From: Mytilus californianus
Lineage: Eukaryota
Reading direction: 5' to 3'
NCBI RefSeq assembly: GCF_021869535.1
Contig: NW_026262723.1
Span: 1,612,001 to 1,676,000, forward strand
DNA: 64,000 nt
The notes under the pieces are model-generated. The model saw only the letters and a program-made list of their open reading frames with translations. It was not told the origin of the DNA and searched no databases. Positions 1,911-61,224 of this stretch are shown here, piece by piece. Position numbers and translations under genes: made by a program. Numbering within the stretch: position 1 is the stretch's first letter; every line of letters begins with the position of its first letter.

Positions 1911-1974
1911 ATGGGGATTGTCGTAATGAAATGCTTTCTAGTGGTTCTTGGTATATCAAGATTAAATATACTTG
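1911..1974 (+). CDS. Gene A signal-peptide exon (MGIVVMKCFLVVLGISRLNIL+G)
   Basis: Acceptor ttacAG at 1885-1886, ATG at 1911, hydrophobic core, donor G|GTAAGT at 1975. The phase-1 end joins 30684 in frame to give ...NILEVQA-C, a plausible cleavage site. The link across the 28.7-kb intron is inferred. Confidence 0.7.
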
Positions 1975-4900
1975 GTAAGTTTGTTCTGTGACTATTGTGT
2001 ATGAATTGTTATTATTTGATAGTTCCATAGTTTATTTTAAATAAATTAAATGTCCATGAAGTGCAGACTCATTCCTGCTATATATATTTCAAATACTGAA
2101 AGTGAACAATAATCCTATCTTATGATGACAACATCATTCAACCCGAAGCGCTTTGAAAGCACCAGATTTACAAAGTTTTATCTTAAATCATAATCAGAAA
2201 CATTAGACTATATATATATTTGGCATTGAACATACAACTATGTGCTTTAAAATTGAAACGCGGTGGTTCATTAAAGATACAATGATTCCATTCCAGTGGA
2301 CGAAATTCAAAACTAAATGTCAAATAAGCAGGGCTAACATAATTTGCTGACTGACCAAACAAAACATGTATAAATATTTATTGCTTGATAACGATTATGT
2401 TAAAAGAAAATATGCATCGGAAACTAAATCTAGTAACAATTTTGAAAACTGCTGAGACACCTGTACGTTATTCTTGAAGTAGACTACACTAGTTTTAATA
2501 TTACACAAATATCTATAAATATGTTTTCGCCATAAACAACAACAGTCGAGGCAAATAGGAAATACCATAATATTATGAAATTTCATAATTTTTTGATATA
2601 TTGGATCAAAGTGGAGTTGTCTTTCTTAGACGCCTAGTGTCAAAATGGACATGGGAGATAACAACTTTTGTCTTAAACGACGTCGAAAGGAAGACAACTC
2701 ATTATTATAAAAAGTTAACATTTAAAATATAAATTTGTATAACAATTTAGGAATTTATTAAATTGTGTTCGAACTATTGGTTTTATTATACACAAGGAGT
2801 AACTCTAGATAAATCAAACTTGACTAAAGATTATTTAAAATCTGGTGTAATGCACTAGAAAGAATCATTATATTTATTACTATTTTATCAGTCTCCGACA
2901 TAGCAAATCATGCATTTGGAGGTCAATTGCGAATTTATTTACAGTTTATTTATTATGTAAACAAATTAAAGACCGTAAAATCATGCGAAATCACAGAAAA
3001 ATATTTCTAAAAAAAACACTGTAAAATATGTTTGAAAATCTAACAACGGGAGATAAACAAACAATCGAATCCCTTACAAAAACTGATAACTATGACAATA
3101 ATTATTACGTTCTGTCAATAGCCTGTGTACAAATAAGCATAGACATTTATGCGATTGATGCGGATCTGACATTACAACATTAAGAATCTACAAAGCTGAA
3201 ATGTAATTCTTTGCATCATAGCAAATTATTAATGTCCAAATGATGGACATTGGCTATCTGATAAAGAAAATAAATTCACTAAAAGCTTAAAAACAAACAG
3301 CAAAATGTCCATAATATGTTATATATACGTAGAATTCTGAGTTGAGGTGAATTAATTGTAACAAAGAATATTTATACCTTTAATCTTTTTTAATTGAACA
3401 TGCTCATGGAGATAAAACACATTTGGCAAATAACCTATTGTTATTTGGAAAGAAACTACTCAGCATAAATTGATCGATGACAATTTGTTCACCATGGTTC
3501 CAGTTGAATGTCAAACTATTTGTACATTTAAATGCGTATTATGTGCATATTTCTACGTACATTTGTCAGATATTTCTATATGAAAGAAGTGATTGTATAC
3601 AAATGCTTAAGTTAAAGCAAGATAAAACTGAAAAGTATTGATTCAAAACAGTTACATCAGTTAAAAACAGAGCATAAGTAAGGTCATAAAGTCTCCTCAC
3701 GGCAATCCCACCTCAGGATATCACGTATTGATGACTTCTGACCATGCAAAATAAATTATCTTAGTCAAAGTGATATTTCAAGCTAATTAAAATTAAAAAA
3801 AAATCAGAACAAGATCTGAGATAATCAGTACTGTTATTGTAGTGGGGTGGGTGGCTAGGGAGTCTTTTTCTGTCGATTACGAGTAGAGCATGGCATCATT
3901 TGGATCAGATACTTTGGTAACGAGTATATTAAATTAAAATGATTTTCATATTTTGATTTCATTCATTAGAATTTAAGTTAGAGAATTTAATAATTCGCAG
4001 TCATTTAAGATAAAAATAAAAAAAACACAATATTAAAAAAGTGTTCCAACAAGAAGGAAAAAAAAAAGACGAATGCGTATGAACAAGGGACCCATATCTT
4101 ATTCGTTCTTCATATGCATATTTGTGGTTCTGCAACACAATGGAGTAAACATTTGAAGGCGTTAAATACATTACTAAGTAACCTTTGCAGAAATAGTCAC
4201 ATGATAAGAATCATATTACAATTTATAATGTGAAATGTAAATAATTTGGAATACAATTTTCTTCGTTCACATCTGTGTTTGTTGGTAATCTTATCTAAGG
4301 GCACCTGCTGGGAGAGATGTACTTCCTGATAATTTAACAAAATATATAAATAACCAGTGACACAGTTCCAGGCTTACTGCTAGTGCAGTTTTATAGAATA
4401 GTATAATAATCTACATTGGAAAAGATTGATAGAAATTAGATTTGAAGGTATACATGAATTGCATAACATGACTCTTAGGGTTTTATTTGAAATGTAAATA
4501 CCGTGCATTTTTCAAAGTAATAATTTGTCCACACACAATGTTTATAAGTTTTTATACAGTTTGCAGATTCAGATTAAATAAAACAAAAAAGTATCGCCAC
4601 TAGAATAACATAAAATATTCAAATACACGTATACGGCATAGCTATAGTGAATAAATTAATAATAATAATTGATCAATGAAATCATAGAATGATTTGAAGA
4701 TAAAATATTAATTCGACTGCAGACCAACAAATCAAACAACACAATACAAAATAACGTAAAATAGAGTTTTAACACCATCCAATAAGAAGTTTCAATAGAT
4801 TTAGAAAGATTAGATAATTGCTCATCTAAATATTTCCAGCTGAAGATTAAAAACATAATATAGTTACTACTCAGTATCCCGATCTGAAGTTGAATGCAAA

Positions 4901-5456
4901 AAAAAAACCATACGTGTCAAGTAAGACGTATCAAAACACTGTTACTACATGTCTGAACTTAATCTCATTTATAATCTTATTTATTACATATGTAGTTACT
5001 AATGAATTTGTCAATGAAGGAAAACGTGTTCCTAATCATTTAACTATTTAACAAACTTTACCATCTCTCTCATGCCTATGTTCTTCTGGAATTTTTGTTA
5101 AACCTATTGACAATAAACAAACAAAGGCGCCATTTCCTTTAAACGTTTCTTAAGCTGCCTAAATTTAACTATTTTCCATCCATGTACTACATATGTGTTC
5201 ATACACTTTGACCGTATATGTATAAAACTCATACAGTCATTCATGATTTGGCTGATACAGTTTATTTTGACTGATTTCGATTTACGATATGAAAATAAGA
5301 AGATATGGTTTAAAACAGATGCCAAATGACGTAGAAGTTACAACTATAGGTTACCGTAAGGCCTTCAACAATGAGCAAAACCAATAGTGCATAGTAAGTT
5401 ACACATTGCCCCGAAACGACAAATATAAAACAGTTCAAACGAGAAAACTAACGGCC

Positions 5457-6110
5457 TTAAGTTGGGGTCACACATTCACGATTTTTACTGCCGTCCTTGA
5501 CAGAACCATTCCCGATTAAGATTTGTCAAACGTCTGATCAAGATTCTGTGAATCGGGGCTGGAAATTGAAACTTTAATTAAAATTTGTAAAAACATATAT
5601 TGAATCATAACAATCAGATATTGTTCAGAAAGCGTCCAAGTTCGGCCGTTTCCAGCCGAATTTGTCCCGATTATACGGTTTTAAATCAGTATTAATCCGA
5701 TTTGTATCTCTCACATGGTAAAGAACGATATAATATGTCCCGACAGCATCCCGATTATACCGAATGTGATCCGACAGAGTTCAGAGAGTGACCAGACAGT
5801 GAACCGACGCTGACGGAAGATATATATCCGTGGGTATTATTGCCAAATTTCGTATTAATAACGGGACTGATCCGCAACGGTTTTGGCAAAGACTGTTCGC
5901 ATTAGGCAAGATCTTATTGCAATCTGGACTCAATCGGCAAAAAACAGCAATGACACATTTCTCCAGATCATGTCCGTTCAACAGGACACCGTCCAGAAAA
6001 CACAGAACATAATAACGATTGTTACGATTTCGATCCGATACAGCAGAAACTGTCACGACATAGTTACGATTGTAATCCGGTTATAGATAATATCAGTTGA
6101 GTCTTCCTGA
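5457..6110 (+). mobile_element. Left part of a probable non-autonomous Harbinger-like DNA element
   Basis: TTA followed by agttggggtcacac terminus, GC-richer body with recurring ccgat/cgatt motifs, no coding capacity; the right TIR was not found. Confidence 0.45.
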
Positions 6111-6315
6111 ATGTTACGGAACTCACCTAACTGTCGGGTGTTTAGCTAACCTCTGCGGACCTACATATTAATTCGTGACCTTCGCATGCTATTCATGTAA
6201 TGTTTGCAATAATTCACTAATCCATCATTTCAATAAGCGGATCTGTGTTTAGTATATATAATTTAAAAGTATGTGATATGTCTTGTCTAGTCTTGTCTTG
6301 TCTTTCAGTCAATTA

Positions 6316-60572: not shown

Positions 60573-60991
60573 ACAAGTTAATATGAAGCTGCTCAATGCT
60601 CCAACAATAGCTATTATCTTACCTTCTATACATTTCTAGGAATATGATTGGTTAAAAGCGTCCGCGTGGAGACCGTGTATATTCCATATTAGGTTAGTAG
60701 GGAGGCGGGGCTTATTTCATACACGGTTAGTAGTGGTGTTACGTCCCTTTATAAAAACAAAACGGTACTGAGAAAAAATCTTAAAGGTTTCAACAGACGA
60801 CGAAATTGATGATGAAGATTGAAATAAATTCATAAAACACATTTAAACCTAAAAAAATTGTTATTGTTGGCATCTGTTTTTGTGGGATCAATGGAAGTAG
60901 TTTCTTAATGCTAACGGTATTGAAGACTTGATCATTTTGATAGGTCACTAGTCTAAATTTCACACGCTAAGATAGTCGGTAAGATAAATTC

Positions 60992-61131
60992 GTTACATAG
61001 TGTGCTAGTGACGTAATACGGTATATATGGGGTCAGTAAATTCCATATGGGGATTCGAGCTTCGCTCTCACCCCATATGGAATTTACTGACCCCATATAT
61101 ACCGTATTAGGTCACTAGCAGACTATGTAAC
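60992..61131. repeat. 140-bp hairpin MITE with GCTTCGC in the loop
   Basis: ~61-bp arms (gttacatagt...catatgggg / ccccatatg...actatgtaac) with few mismatches and an 18-nt loop. Confidence 0.92.
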
Positions 61132-61184
61132 TAATAATATTTGTACAGTCCCAAACGACTATTGTAGCTCAATATTAAACTTAC

Positions 61185-61224
61185 ATTTAAGCAGAAAATA
61201 CGTATATATTAGATAACCATCCAT
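61185..61224 (-). CDS. Gene B signal-peptide exon (MDGYLIYTYFLLK+T)
   Basis: Acceptor AG at 61233-61232, caaaATGG start context, donor T|GTAAGT. The phase-1 join to D1 gives MDGYLIYTYFLLKYIIDIYG-SIC. Confidence 0.75.

What the first reader, a model, noticed from the sequence alone, without database searches (positions are those of the whole stretch)
1911..61224. Tail-to-tail pair of divergent IgSF paralogs resembling a signalling-plus-decoy paired-receptor system in a probable mussel
Seen: two multi-exon genes on opposite strands share two homologous N-terminal domains (D1, D2) but only scattered identities (about 20 over ~90 D1 residues by eye). Gene B adds three Ig domains, a TM and a Tyr-rich ITIM-type tail. 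Gene A has a mucin-like stalk and ends right after its hydrophobic segment. Established: vertebrate paired receptor families (KIR, LILR, SIRP, CEACAM, CD300) and Hydractinia Alr loci cluster paralogs with similar ectodomains and contrasting tails. Inference: this is a bivalve self/non-self or immune paired-receptor locus.
Basis: partly seen in the sequence, partly recalled or inferred. Interest (0 to 1): 0.88.

Follow-up and report, generated by a model that had tools for sequence, protein, structure and literature searches.

The report
Two divergent mussel Ig-receptor genes
Two neighbouring mussel genes that face each other belong to a large, undescribed mussel-only family of cell-surface proteins whose outer domains are antibody-like folds that sequence searches miss. 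They are distant cousins within that family, not a matched signalling-and-decoy receptor pair.

Summary
Two convergent multi-exon genes (A on +, B on -) each begin with two homologous domains, D1 and D2. These are about 20% identical (BLASTP E 1e-7 and 9e-4). Family profiles built without the window hit only these four exons (E 1e-28 to 5e-16). Pfam and PDB sequence searches miss both domains, but both fold as V-set Ig domains (pLDDT 87-90; nanobody, CD28, TIGIT and nectin matches). D1 defines a family seen only in Mytilus and unnamed runs: 156 clusters, mostly signal peptide + D1 + three TM helices. Gene B (D1, D2, three Ig-like domains, TM, acidic seven-tyrosine tail) matches Mytilus proteins with the same conserved tail motifs. 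Gene A's D2-to-stalk-to-next-exon splicing appears in one RNA run, in a variant about 4% divergent with a 14-residue deletion. Its TM exon ending in TAG is prediction only. The paired-receptor reading fails its key test. A-D1 and B-D1 lie on opposite sides of the deepest well-supported split (SH-aLRT 96) in the D1 tree, and each has closer kin in Mytilus. Only one tail tyrosine fits the ITIM consensus, and the conserved feature is YEEI. An immune or self/non-self role is untested. No RNA evidence was obtained for gene B.

The parts
1911..1974 (+). Gene A exon 1: ATG plus a 21-residue hydrophobic signal peptide, phase-1 donor gtaagt
   Evidence: It is the only Met-initiated hydrophobic exon with a phase-1 consensus donor in the 30 kb upstream of A-D1. 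Prediction only, with no RNA support.
30684..30995 (+). Gene A D1: cryptic V-set-like Ig domain exon (312 nt, phase 1-1)
   Evidence: Splice sites were identified. BLASTP against B-D1 gives E 1e-7. The window-free family HMM gives E 4.6e-17. It falls in the A-type clade of the D1 tree. The 274 nt of the X4 contig upstream of D2 are presumably this exon.
32265..32621 (+). Gene A D2: second cryptic V-like Ig domain with a Cys-rich loop (phase 1-1)
   Evidence: The X4 contig begins to match at 32264/5, at the predicted acceptor (the junction to D1 lies outside the stretch that was laid). It splices out at 32620/1 to 32989/90 with GT..AG ends. The window-free HMM gives E 4.6e-16. An ortholog in L001 shows dN/dS 0.40.
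32431..32472 (+). 42-nt in-frame segment of A-D2 (14 residues with 3 Cys of the Cys-rich loop) that is absent from the transcribed variant in run X4
   Evidence: The joint skips 42 nt with AT..GT ends, so it is not an intron. Translation was checked. P0035 has an 8-residue gap in the same loop, and this is the low-pLDDT part of the D2 model.
32990..33085 (+). Gene A stalk exon (32 codons, 32% Ser/Thr, Lys/Glu-rich), phase 1-1
   Evidence: Both junctions appear in X4 contigs (32620>32989 and 33085>34389/92). The sequence was read. dN/dS is about 1.0 against L001.
34389..34457 (+). Gene A small extracellular exon (23 codons), phase 1-1
   Evidence: An X4 contig joins 33085 to about 34389; the tool placed the joint at 34392 with three unmatched letters, so the acceptor at 34389 is my reading. 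The donor gtaagt at 34458 is predicted. The frame is open.
37601..37686 (+). Gene A predicted last coding exon: Arg-flanked hydrophobic segment, then C-C-C-V-T and TAG. AATAAA lies about 107 nt downstream.
   Evidence: The acceptor follows an 18/18 pyrimidine tract, and this is the best phase-1 TM candidate between 34.4 and 43 kb. All four runs showed zero depth. No homologous ORF was found.
61185..61224 (-). Gene B putative exon 1 (ATG, 13 codons, phase-1 donor gtaagt)
   Evidence: The sequence was read. The peptide is only weakly hydrophobic and was not picked up by my stricter scan. Prediction only.
55118..55438 (-). Gene B D1: cryptic V-set Ig domain exon (321 nt, phase 1-1)
   Evidence: Splice sites were identified. 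The window-free HMM gives E 1e-28. The AlphaFold2 model has pLDDT 89.7. Foldseek matches nanobody and VH domains at TMq 0.55-0.67, and CD28, VH and CD4 D1.
52314..52658 (-). Gene B D2: cryptic V-like Ig domain with a Cys-rich loop (345 nt, phase 1-1)
   Evidence: The donor was placed by comparison with orthologous ORFs P0165-P0167. The model has pLDDT 86.9. Foldseek matches TIGIT IgV, nectin-2 D1 and VH at TMq 0.5-0.7. dN/dS is 0.23 against L002.
51659..51931 (-). Gene B D3: C2-set-like Ig domain exon (phase 1-1)
   Evidence: tblastn with P0035, P0108, P0126 and P0021 hits it. The family pattern C...W...D-N-G-x-x-C-x-C is present. Language-model neighbours are 9/10 Ig C2-set. Pfam gives only a marginal hit in a relative. 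dN/dS is 0.52. The fold was not modelled.
49506..49796 (-). Gene B D4: canonical Ig (I-set/Ig_3) domain exon (phase 1-1)
   Evidence: Pfam Ig_3 gives E 1.2e-5 and I-set E 3.4e-4, both below the gathering score. The equivalent domain of P0108 passes the I-set and ig gathering scores. tblastn E-values reach 2e-20.
48347..48667 (-). Gene B D5: I-set-like domain exon (phase 1-1)
   Evidence: tblastn with P0108 and P0126 hits it. The donor was read. Language-model neighbours are 10/10 Ig. There is no Pfam hit. The fold was not modelled.
46904..47011 (-). Gene B transmembrane exon (hydrophobic core followed by R-Q-R-R), phase 1-1
   Evidence: It is the strongest TM segment on the minus strand between D5 and the tail (KD 3.03). 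It has a ccag acceptor and a gtatgt donor. Prediction only.
43548..43638 (-). Candidate gene B linker exon (phase 1 to 2) ending G-R-R-K before the tail
   Evidence: It is needed to reconcile the phase-1 TM donor with the phase-2 tail acceptor. It is one of three candidates, and its end resembles the relatives' junction before Y-x-A-A-P. Weak inference.
43088..43268 (-). Gene B cytoplasmic tail exon: acidic, seven Tyr, with motifs Y-L-A-A-P, N-I-Y-N-E-T, S-T-Y-E-E-I and H-Y-L-E-L-E followed by the stop
   Evidence: The sequence was read. The motifs align with the tails of P0108, P0035, P0077, P0021 and P0126. tblastn with P0021 and P0035 hits it.

Best explanation
The window holds two convergently transcribed members of an undescribed family of cell-surface proteins, seen so far only in mytilid mussels. 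The family is defined by an N-terminal V-set Ig domain (D1: C..W..C..C..C..G-x-W-x-C-x-H-G) that sequence searches do not recognise. A minority of members carry a second V-like domain (D2) with a Cys-rich, indel-prone loop.

The domains are phase 1-1 exon modules combined with different back ends:
- Most members are signal peptide + D1 + three TM helices.
- Some are D1(+D2) + Ig domains + TM + a tyrosine-motif tail.
- At least one M. edulis gene joins D1-D2-TM to a cytoplasmic DZIP3-like HEPN region.

Gene B is of the second type, with five Ig-like domains. Inferred mechanism: the membrane-distal V-like domains bind a ligand, and clustering leads to phosphorylation of the conserved tail tyrosines (YEEI and the C-terminal H-Y-L-E-L). 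These then dock SH2 proteins. The sign of the signal is unresolved.

Gene A is a short member of the other deep branch of the family. It has D1-D2, a short Ser/Thr-rich stalk, and probably a C-terminal hydrophobic segment with no cytoplasmic signalling tail. That segment could be a palmitoylated TM anchor or a GPI-attachment signal. Gene A could therefore act only through partners or as a ligand.

The two genes lie side by side because the family is clustered in the genome. They are not a matched activating/inhibitory or decoy pair.

Shown here: the homology, the folds of D1 and D2, the family architectures, purifying selection, and gene A's internal splicing. Inferred: the signalling mechanism, gene A's C-terminus, and the gene B transcript.
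For: - Pairwise and profile homology of D1 and D2.
- D1 profile search: 156 clusters at E<=1e-3. All named hits with a whole-domain D1 match are Mytilus galloprovincialis, edulis, coruscus or trossulus.
- Architectures: most proteins of 225 residues or more are D1 plus 2-4 hydrophobic segments, typically three after the signal peptide. The D2 and Ig-tail types are minorities.
- P0156 has HEPN_DZIP3 at its gathering score.
- Confident V-set-like models for D1 and D2, with no Pfam or PDB sequence match.
- Gene B exons are collinear with P0035 and P0108, and the tail motifs are conserved in five relatives.
- An SH-aLRT 96 branch separates the A-type and B-type D1 clades. D2 shows the same subtypes.
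- Orthologous pieces of both genes occur in a related genome: 80% and 85.5% nucleotide identity including introns, all Cys kept, dN/dS 0.23-0.52 in the domains.
- Spliced RNA contigs join A-D2, the stalk exon and the next exon.
- The family clusters on M. edulis chromosome OY782962.1, including a head-to-head D1 neighbour.
Against: - No read evidence was obtained for any gene B junction or for gene A's first and last exons.
- Run X3 (6% of it read) showed zero depth on gene A.
- D3 and D5 are called Ig-like only from sequence patterns and language-model neighbours.
- Gene B's TM-to-tail link needs an extra exon that is only guessed.
- The transcript seen in X4 differs by about 4% and a 42-nt deletion, so it may come from a paralog elsewhere rather than from this locus.
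- Nothing tested here bears on ligand, cell type or signalling.
- Restriction to mytilids reflects which hits carry names. Many hits are unnamed Logan contigs.
Confidence: 0.7

Rival explanations
1. A and B form a functional paired-receptor system: B signals through an ITIM-type tail, and A is a tail-less decoy or partner that sees the same ligand.
For: - The two genes are adjacent and convergent, with the same D1-D2 head.
- B has one ITIM-consensus tyrosine, S-T-Y-E-E-I.
- A's predicted end has no cytoplasmic tail, and an Arg sits at the outer edge of the hydrophobic segment.
Against: - The ectodomains are only 19-22% identical and fall in the two deepest clades of the family. Paired receptors have highly related ectodomains (PMC2211832, PMC2194075).
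- The ITIM -2 residue is not conserved in relatives; YEEI is.
- A's last exon has no RNA support.
- The convergent neighbour of the B-type gene P0108/P0171 in M. edulis is an unrelated mucin-like TM protein, not an A-type gene.
Confidence: 0.07
2. The locus is part of a polymorphic self/non-self (allorecognition-type) system, comparable to Hydractinia Alr or Botryllus fuhc receptors. The V-like D1 and D2 domains would carry allelic specificity.
For: - The family consists of cryptic V-set domains with tyrosine-motif tails in a clustered family, as in Alr (PMC9546547).
- The transcribed A variant from another individual differs by about 4%. Five of the 6 listed changes are non-synonymous, and 14 residues of the Cys-rich loop are deleted.
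- The stalk exon has dN/dS of about 1.
Against: - The domain-wide dN/dS of 0.23-0.52 indicates purifying selection.
- Only one variant was seen, and it may be a paralog.
- No population data were examined.
- Mussels are solitary and no allorecognition phenotype is tied to this family. No paper in the searched library links them.
Confidence: 0.1
3. Both genes are cell-adhesion or endocytic molecules rather than immune receptors. The Ig ectodomains would mediate cell-cell or matrix contact, and gene B's Y-x-x-hydrophobic motifs would serve as AP-2 sorting signals rather than SH2 docking sites.
For: - D2 resembles the V domains of the nectin/PVR/TIGIT adhesion group.
- D3 neighbours include CD80-like C2-set, Kirrel, fasciclin-3 and NCAM clusters.
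- YEEI and YLEL also fit the Y-x-x-hydrophobic sorting consensus (established knowledge; sequence).
Against: - The family is lineage-restricted, large and fast-evolving. That is atypical for core adhesion molecules.
- Several acidic tyrosine motifs are conserved, including an optimal Src-SH2 site.
- No expression data were obtained.
Confidence: 0.2
4. Gene A is a decaying or truncated copy. The TAG in the TM exon would have cut off a former cytoplasmic part such as the one in M. edulis P0091/P0156, and the gene is no longer functional.
For:
- The A-type relative P0156 carries a long HEPN-containing cytoplasmic region.
- Run X3 showed zero depth on gene A.
Against: - A-D2 keeps all its cysteines and has dN/dS 0.40 against a related genome.
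- Spliced transcripts exist.
- No HEPN or NHL exons lie downstream.
- The putative donor is weak (CAA|GTACGG).
- An AATAAA follows at a suitable distance.
- P0094, an A-type M. edulis protein, also lacks a cytoplasmic part.
Confidence: 0.1

Closest known systems
Uncharacterised Mytilus proteins of the same family: VDI35981.1 (P0035), CAG2213292.1 (P0108), CAC5382471.1 (P0077), XP_071182111.1 (P0091) and XP_071122939.1 (P0094)
   Same: - They share D1 at the N-terminus.
- P0035 and P0077 share B-type D2. P0091 and P0094 share A-type D2.
- P0108, P0126 and P0021 share D3-D5.
- The tail motifs Y-x-A-A-P, N-[VI]-Y, YEEI and a C-terminal H-Y-x-E-x are the same.
   Different: - Identity is only 25-40% per domain, and none has exactly gene B's five-domain order.
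- P0091 and P0156 add a cytoplasmic HEPN_DZIP3 region that gene A lacks.
- All are annotated only as 'uncharacterized' or 'Ig-like domain-containing'.
Vertebrate paired immune receptors (KIR, LILR, SIRP, PILR, MAIR/CD300)
   Same: They are linked IgSF genes. One partner has tyrosine motifs in its tail and the other has a short or absent tail.
   Different: - Paired receptors have highly related ectodomains (PMC2211832, PMC2194075). Here identity is 19-22% and the split is ancient.
- No charged residue lies within the core of A's hydrophobic segment.
- No adaptor is known.
Hydractinia Alr family (PMC9546547)
   Same: It is a clustered, lineage-specific family. [quoted passage not shown] Some members have ITAM/ITIM-like tails.
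   Different: - No sequence relationship was found.
- The domain order and cysteine patterns differ.
- Alr polymorphism and its allorecognition role are demonstrated experimentally. Nothing of the kind is known here.
TIGIT / nectin / PVR-type and CD28-type IgV domains
   Same: These are the best non-antibody structural matches: D2 to TIGIT IgV and nectin-2 D1, and D1 to CD28. TIGIT also combines an IgV domain with tyrosine-motif signalling.
   Different: - TM-scores are only 0.5-0.7 with 12-19% identity.
- There is no profile-level sequence match to any PDB chain.
- D1 and D2 carry extra cysteines, and D2 has a Cys-rich loop.
CEACAM family (ITIM-bearing TM members beside GPI-anchored members)
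   Same: If gene A's C-terminal hydrophobic segment is a GPI signal, the locus would combine a GPI-linked and a tyrosine-tail Ig protein, as CEACAM clusters do.
   Different: CEACAM members share closely similar N domains, and A and B do not. GPI anchoring of A is untested.

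Membership tests
Immunoglobulin superfamily | Ig beta-sandwich fold of the extracellular domains | tested here: met
   For B-D1 and B-D2, the AlphaFold2 models have pLDDT 89.7 and 86.9. The top Foldseek hits are V-set domains at probability 1.00 and TMq 0.5-0.7. A-D1 and A-D2 are covered by homology. D3 and D5 were not modelled; they have only language-model leads.
Immunoglobulin superfamily | Match to curated Ig sequence profiles (Pfam ig, I-set, V-set, Ig_3) | tested here: inconclusive
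   D4 matches Ig_3 at E 1.2e-5, below the gathering score. D1, D2, D3 and D5 have no hit. The D4-equivalent of P0108 passes the I-set and ig cut-offs.
Mytilid D1-domain family (unnamed; defined here) | Significant match to the D1 profile, with conserved C9, W12, C23, C45, C54 and G-x-W-x-C-x-H-G, placed directly after the signal peptide | tested here: met
   The window-free HMM gives 1e-28 for B and 4.6e-17 for A. The conserved columns are listed. D1 is N-terminal in nearly all hits.
Paired activating/inhibitory (or decoy) receptors | Closely linked paralogous genes | tested here: met
   The two genes are convergent, with stop codons 5.4 kb apart (37686 and 43088).
Paired activating/inhibitory (or decoy) receptors | Highly related ectodomains (definition in PMC2211832 and PMC2194075) | tested here: not met
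   Identity is 19-21% in D1 and 17-22% in D2. A and B lie in different deep clades, SH-aLRT 96.
Paired activating/inhibitory (or decoy) receptors | Inhibitory partner with a conserved cytoplasmic ITIM, [S/I/V/L]-x-Y-x-x-[I/V/L] | tested here: inconclusive
   One of seven Tyr fits (S-T-Y-E-E-I). In relatives the -2 residue is S, P or H, while Y-E-E-I is kept. The other tyrosines do not fit.
Paired activating/inhibitory (or decoy) receptors | Partner with a short tail and a charged TM residue that couples to an ITAM adaptor, or a proven decoy | tested here: inconclusive
   The predicted A C-terminus has no tail. Its only charge is an Arg at the outer boundary of the hydrophobic segment. The exon has no RNA support, and no adaptor was looked for.
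Paired activating/inhibitory (or decoy) receptors | Shared ligand with opposing outputs | not testable with these tools
   This needs binding and signalling assays.
ITAM-bearing receptors | Two Y-x-x-[L/I] motifs spaced 6-12 residues apart | tested here: not met
   YEEI and YLEL are more than 30 residues apart.
Allorecognition loci (Alr, fuhc type) | Extreme allelic polymorphism with diversifying selection in the distal domains | tested here: inconclusive
   One variant transcript is about 4% divergent, mostly non-synonymous, with a loop deletion. Between-species dN/dS is 0.23-0.52. No population sample was examined.

The most novel reading that the evidence does not exclude
The D1/D2 genes are the first sighted members of a mussel-specific, clustered and polymorphic system of cryptic V-set receptors. 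A variable V-like head, with an indel-prone Cys-rich loop, would be plugged onto alternative back ends: a three-TM module, tyrosine-motif tails, or a cytoplasmic HEPN module. In that reading the family acts in non-self or altered-self recognition, which is relevant to transmissible neoplasia in mussels. The A/B locus would be one polymorphic node of the system.
Probability: 0.12. Interest if true: 0.75.

Novelty: new variant of a known kind. Interest (0 to 1): 0.4.

Why it matters
The window gives a worked example of Ig V-set domains that Pfam and PDB sequence profiles cannot see but structure prediction can. The Hydractinia Alr family is a comparable case.

These domains define a sizeable mussel family of at least 156 clusters at 50% identity. 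All named members with a full D1 are annotated only as uncharacterised or Ig-like domain-containing proteins. No paper in the searched library was found to describe the family.

The family's exon-module design pairs one N-terminal V-like domain with three-TM, tyrosine-tail or HEPN-containing back ends. It is a concrete target for work on bivalve immune and recognition receptors.

For the claim as made, the result is sobering. Adjacency plus contrasting tails does not make a paired receptor, and ectodomain relatedness has to be tested first.

Tried and rejected
- Extra D1/D2 or Ig exons in the window: none by tblastn or family HMMs.
- HEPN/NHL exons downstream of gene A, as in P0091: none.
- Pfam on ten other long ORFs: nothing. 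A degraded reverse-transcriptase fragment at 35.5-36.3 kb was seen.
- Rfam: no match.
- Sequence-profile searches of D1 and D2 against PDB chains: only chance-level hits, to dynein light chain and uricase.
- hhalign of D3 against D4, D5 against D4, and D1 against D2: only edge artefacts, so nothing can be said about kinship between domains.
- Search for the window's own full-length gene B protein, using a mixed alignment of window exons and Mytilus relatives: only Mytilus proteins and fragments were found.
- Search for relatives of the gene A TM-exon ORF, to see whether the TAG is conserved: none.
- Exact look-up of P0091 failed. The longest isoform, P0156, worked.
- Conservation of the A-B adjacency: the convergent neighbour of the M. 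edulis B-type gene is a mucin-like TM protein with a similar tyrosine tail, not an A-type gene. The P0035 contig ends at the gene.
- Gene B junctions therefore remain untested.
- Literature searches for this family in Mytilus found nothing specific.

Full report
**Window and gene models**

The window is AT-rich (29-37% G+C) and has no N runs.

Stop-to-stop ORFs and splice-site inspection show a plus-strand gene A:
- D1 at 30684-30995
- D2 at 32265-32621
- stalk exon at 32990-33085
- a small exon at 34389-34457
- a hydrophobic last exon at 37601-37686

They also show a minus-strand gene B:
- D1 at 55438-55118
- D2 at 52658-52314
- D3 at 51931-51659
- D4 at 49796-49506
- D5 at 48667-48347
- TM exon at 47011-46904
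- tail exon at 43268-43088

These models rest. All domain exons are phase 1-1.

One is a good signal-peptide exon for A at 1911-1974, the only candidate in 30 kb. The other is a weaker 13-codon first exon for B at 61224-61185. The two stop codons lie 5.4 kb apart, so the genes are tail-to-tail.

**Is the D1/D2 resemblance real?**

Yes.
- BLASTP gives E 1e-7 (21% identity) for D1 and E 9e-4 (22%) for D2.
- The alignments share a cysteine/tryptophan scaffold.
- A D1 profile searched against 1.84 billion representative proteins found 156 clusters at E<=1e-3.
- Every named hit with a whole-domain D1 match is from Mytilus galloprovincialis, M. edulis, M. coruscus or M. trossulus. These are annotated only as uncharacterised or 'Ig-like domain-containing'. 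One named Dreissena protein (P0098) matched only part of the profile in six stretches, which I take to be spurious.
- HMMs built solely from those relatives hit exactly the two D1 and two D2 exons among 1,145 six-frame ORFs of the window, at E 1e-28 to 5e-16, and nothing else.

**What are D1 and D2?**

Pfam finds nothing in either domain. Profiles of D1 and D2 find no solved structure by sequence.

AlphaFold2 with the family alignments gives confident all-beta models. B-D1 has pLDDT 89.7 and B-D2 has pLDDT 86.9.

Foldseek matches both to V-set Ig domains:
- D1 matches nanobodies and VH domains, CD28 and CD4 D1.
- D2 matches TIGIT IgV, nectin-2 D1 and VH domains.
- TM-scores are 0.5-0.7 at probability 1.00.

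They are therefore cryptic V-set-like Ig domains. This parallels the Hydractinia Alr family (PMC9546547).

For the other gene B domains:
- D4 is a recognisable Ig domain (Ig_3 E 1.2e-5). Its counterpart in P0108 passes the Pfam I-set cut-off.
- D3 and D5 have Ig-type sequence patterns and Ig-only language-model neighbours.

**The family**

Among hits of 225 residues or more, the commonest build is signal peptide + D1 + three hydrophobic helices, about 280 residues long. Minorities carry other architectures:
- D2 is present in P0035, P0077, P0091/P0156 and P0094.
- D3-D5-type Ig domains with a TM and a tyrosine tail occur in P0108, P0126 and P0021.
- M. edulis XP_071182111 and its isoforms join D1-D2-TM to a cytoplasmic region with a DZIP3-like HEPN domain at its gathering score. 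An independent annotation has the same fusion.

D2 falls into an A-type (gene A, P0168, P0091, P0094) and a B-type (gene B, P0165-7, P0077, P0035).

In a D1 tree, gene A groups with P0049, P0094, P0118, P0057 and P0091. An SH-aLRT 96 branch separates this clade from the other 74 sequences, which include gene B. The tree is short (107 columns) and has long branches, so only this deep split is used.

B-D1 is 30-37% identical to most of the family but only 19% identical to A-D1.

On M. edulis chromosome OY782962.1, family genes lie at 2.31, 11.88 and 12.24 Mb. The last has a head-to-head D1 neighbour. The family is thus clustered locally, and that is enough to explain the adjacency of A and B.

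**Constraint**

Logan contigs of an unnamed related genome (SRR29152239) carry orthologous pieces of both genes. They show 80% and 85.5% nucleotide identity, including introns.

| Region | dN/dS (Nei-Gojobori) |
|---|---|
| A-D2 | 0.40 |
| A stalk exon | about 1.0 |
| B-D2 | 0.23 |
| B-D3 | 0.52 |

All cysteines are retained. Both genes are under purifying selection but evolve fast. More distant copies exist in sister runs at 74-77% identity, and these align over the exon only.

**RNA evidence**

In run X4 (Logan contigs of a run guessed to be RNA, same species label, a different sample and study from the assembly's) a 619-nt contig has four parts:
- 274 nt of upstream sequence, presumably D1;
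- D2 from its predicted acceptor;
- a splice from 32620/1 to 32989/90 with GT..AG ends;
- the stalk exon.

A second contig joins 33085 to about 34389. I place the acceptor there, treating the three unmatched letters as a one-base variant.

These contigs confirm three of gene A's junctions and show that it is transcribed. The contig is about 4% divergent. Five of the six listed changes are non-synonymous. It lacks 42 nt (14 residues, three Cys) of the Cys-rich D2 loop. This is the same loop that is gapped in P0035 and poorly modelled. It may be another allele or a paralog.

The raw RNA-seq run X3 (6% read) showed no reads on gene A. The 37601 exon had zero depth in all four runs. No reads were laid on gene B, so its model rests on collinearity with Mytilus proteins.

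**The tails**

Gene B's last exon encodes an acidic 59-residue end with seven tyrosines. Aligned with five relatives, the conserved elements are Y-x-A-A-P, N-[VI]-Y, Y-E-E-I and a C-terminal H-Y-[ILM]-E-[LVM].
- Only S-T-Y-E-E-I fits the ITIM consensus, and its -2 residue varies among relatives. The conserved feature is YEEI, the preferred Src-family SH2 site (established knowledge).
- The spacing of YEEI and YLEL excludes a canonical ITAM.
- The same motifs also fit Y-x-x-hydrophobic sorting signals.
- The TM exon ends in phase 1 and the tail exon starts in phase 2, so a linker exon is needed. The candidate at 43638-43548 is plausible but unproven.

Gene A's predicted end is an Arg-flanked hydrophobic stretch followed by C-C-C-V-T and TAG, with AATAAA about 107 nt downstream. 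It is the best phase-compatible TM candidate. Its layout (a short polar spacer, then a terminal hydrophobic run) would also suit a GPI-attachment signal. That is inference and was not tested.

Several observations argue against it:
- the downstream GT is a weak donor;
- no further coding exons were found;
- another A-type protein, P0094, also lacks a cytoplasmic part.

**Verdict on the interpretation**

'Divergent IgSF paralogs, tail-to-tail, in a mussel' is right.

'Signalling-plus-decoy paired receptors' is not supported. The defining feature of highly related ectodomains (PMC2211832, PMC2194075) was tested and not met, and the A/B split predates the divergence from Mytilus. The ITIM assignment and gene A's tail-less state are inconclusive.

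A self/non-self role remains a speculation, with one weak hint from the diverged, loop-deleted transcript.

No paper in the searched library describes this family. I therefore rate it a new variant of a known kind (IgSF surface receptors), of moderate interest.

Noticed in passing
L006 10001-27160 (M. edulis OY782962.1, 12.24 Mb; protein P0156/P0091): An A-type D1-D2-TM protein continues into a roughly 700-residue cytoplasmic part with a DZIP3-like HEPN domain (27.8 bits; gathering score 27). By eye it also has NHL-like repeats. A surface Ig receptor wired directly to a HEPN module is unusual. Two independent annotations agree on the fusion.
   Followed up: partly
L005 19465-23746 and L007 31851-38337 (M. 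edulis): The gene convergent to the B-type gene P0108/P0171 encodes a mucin-like repeat ectodomain, a TM segment and a tyrosine tail ending H-H-Y-V-D-I-I-A. This suggests that the tyrosine-tail module is shared by exon shuffling with proteins that are not Ig.
   Followed up: partly
window 11153-12686: A tandem array with a 160/321-bp unit, 4.8-9.6 copies, 84-92% matches. ORFs are open on both strands. It lies inside gene A's putative 28.7-kb first intron.
   Followed up: no
window 35514-36338 (+): A degraded reverse-transcriptase fragment (RVT_1, E 0.05) lies inside the gene A intron between 34457 and 37601. It is covered by low-level RNA contigs.
   Followed up: no
window 32000-32199 and 37000-37399: These are very abundant repeat-derived sequences in all RNA runs, with word depth up to about 23,700 in X4. 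Many reads run on into unlike sequence. They are probably a highly expressed or high-copy interspersed repeat flanking gene A exons.
   Followed up: no
window 32691-32734 and 63790-63833: A (CT)22 microsatellite lies just downstream of the A-D2 donor. An A44 run lies near the window end.
   Followed up: no
window 45618-45725 (-): A second TM-like open segment, followed by K-K, lies between gene B's TM and tail exons. No convincing splice sites were found. It could be an alternative exon or part of a repeat.
   Followed up: no
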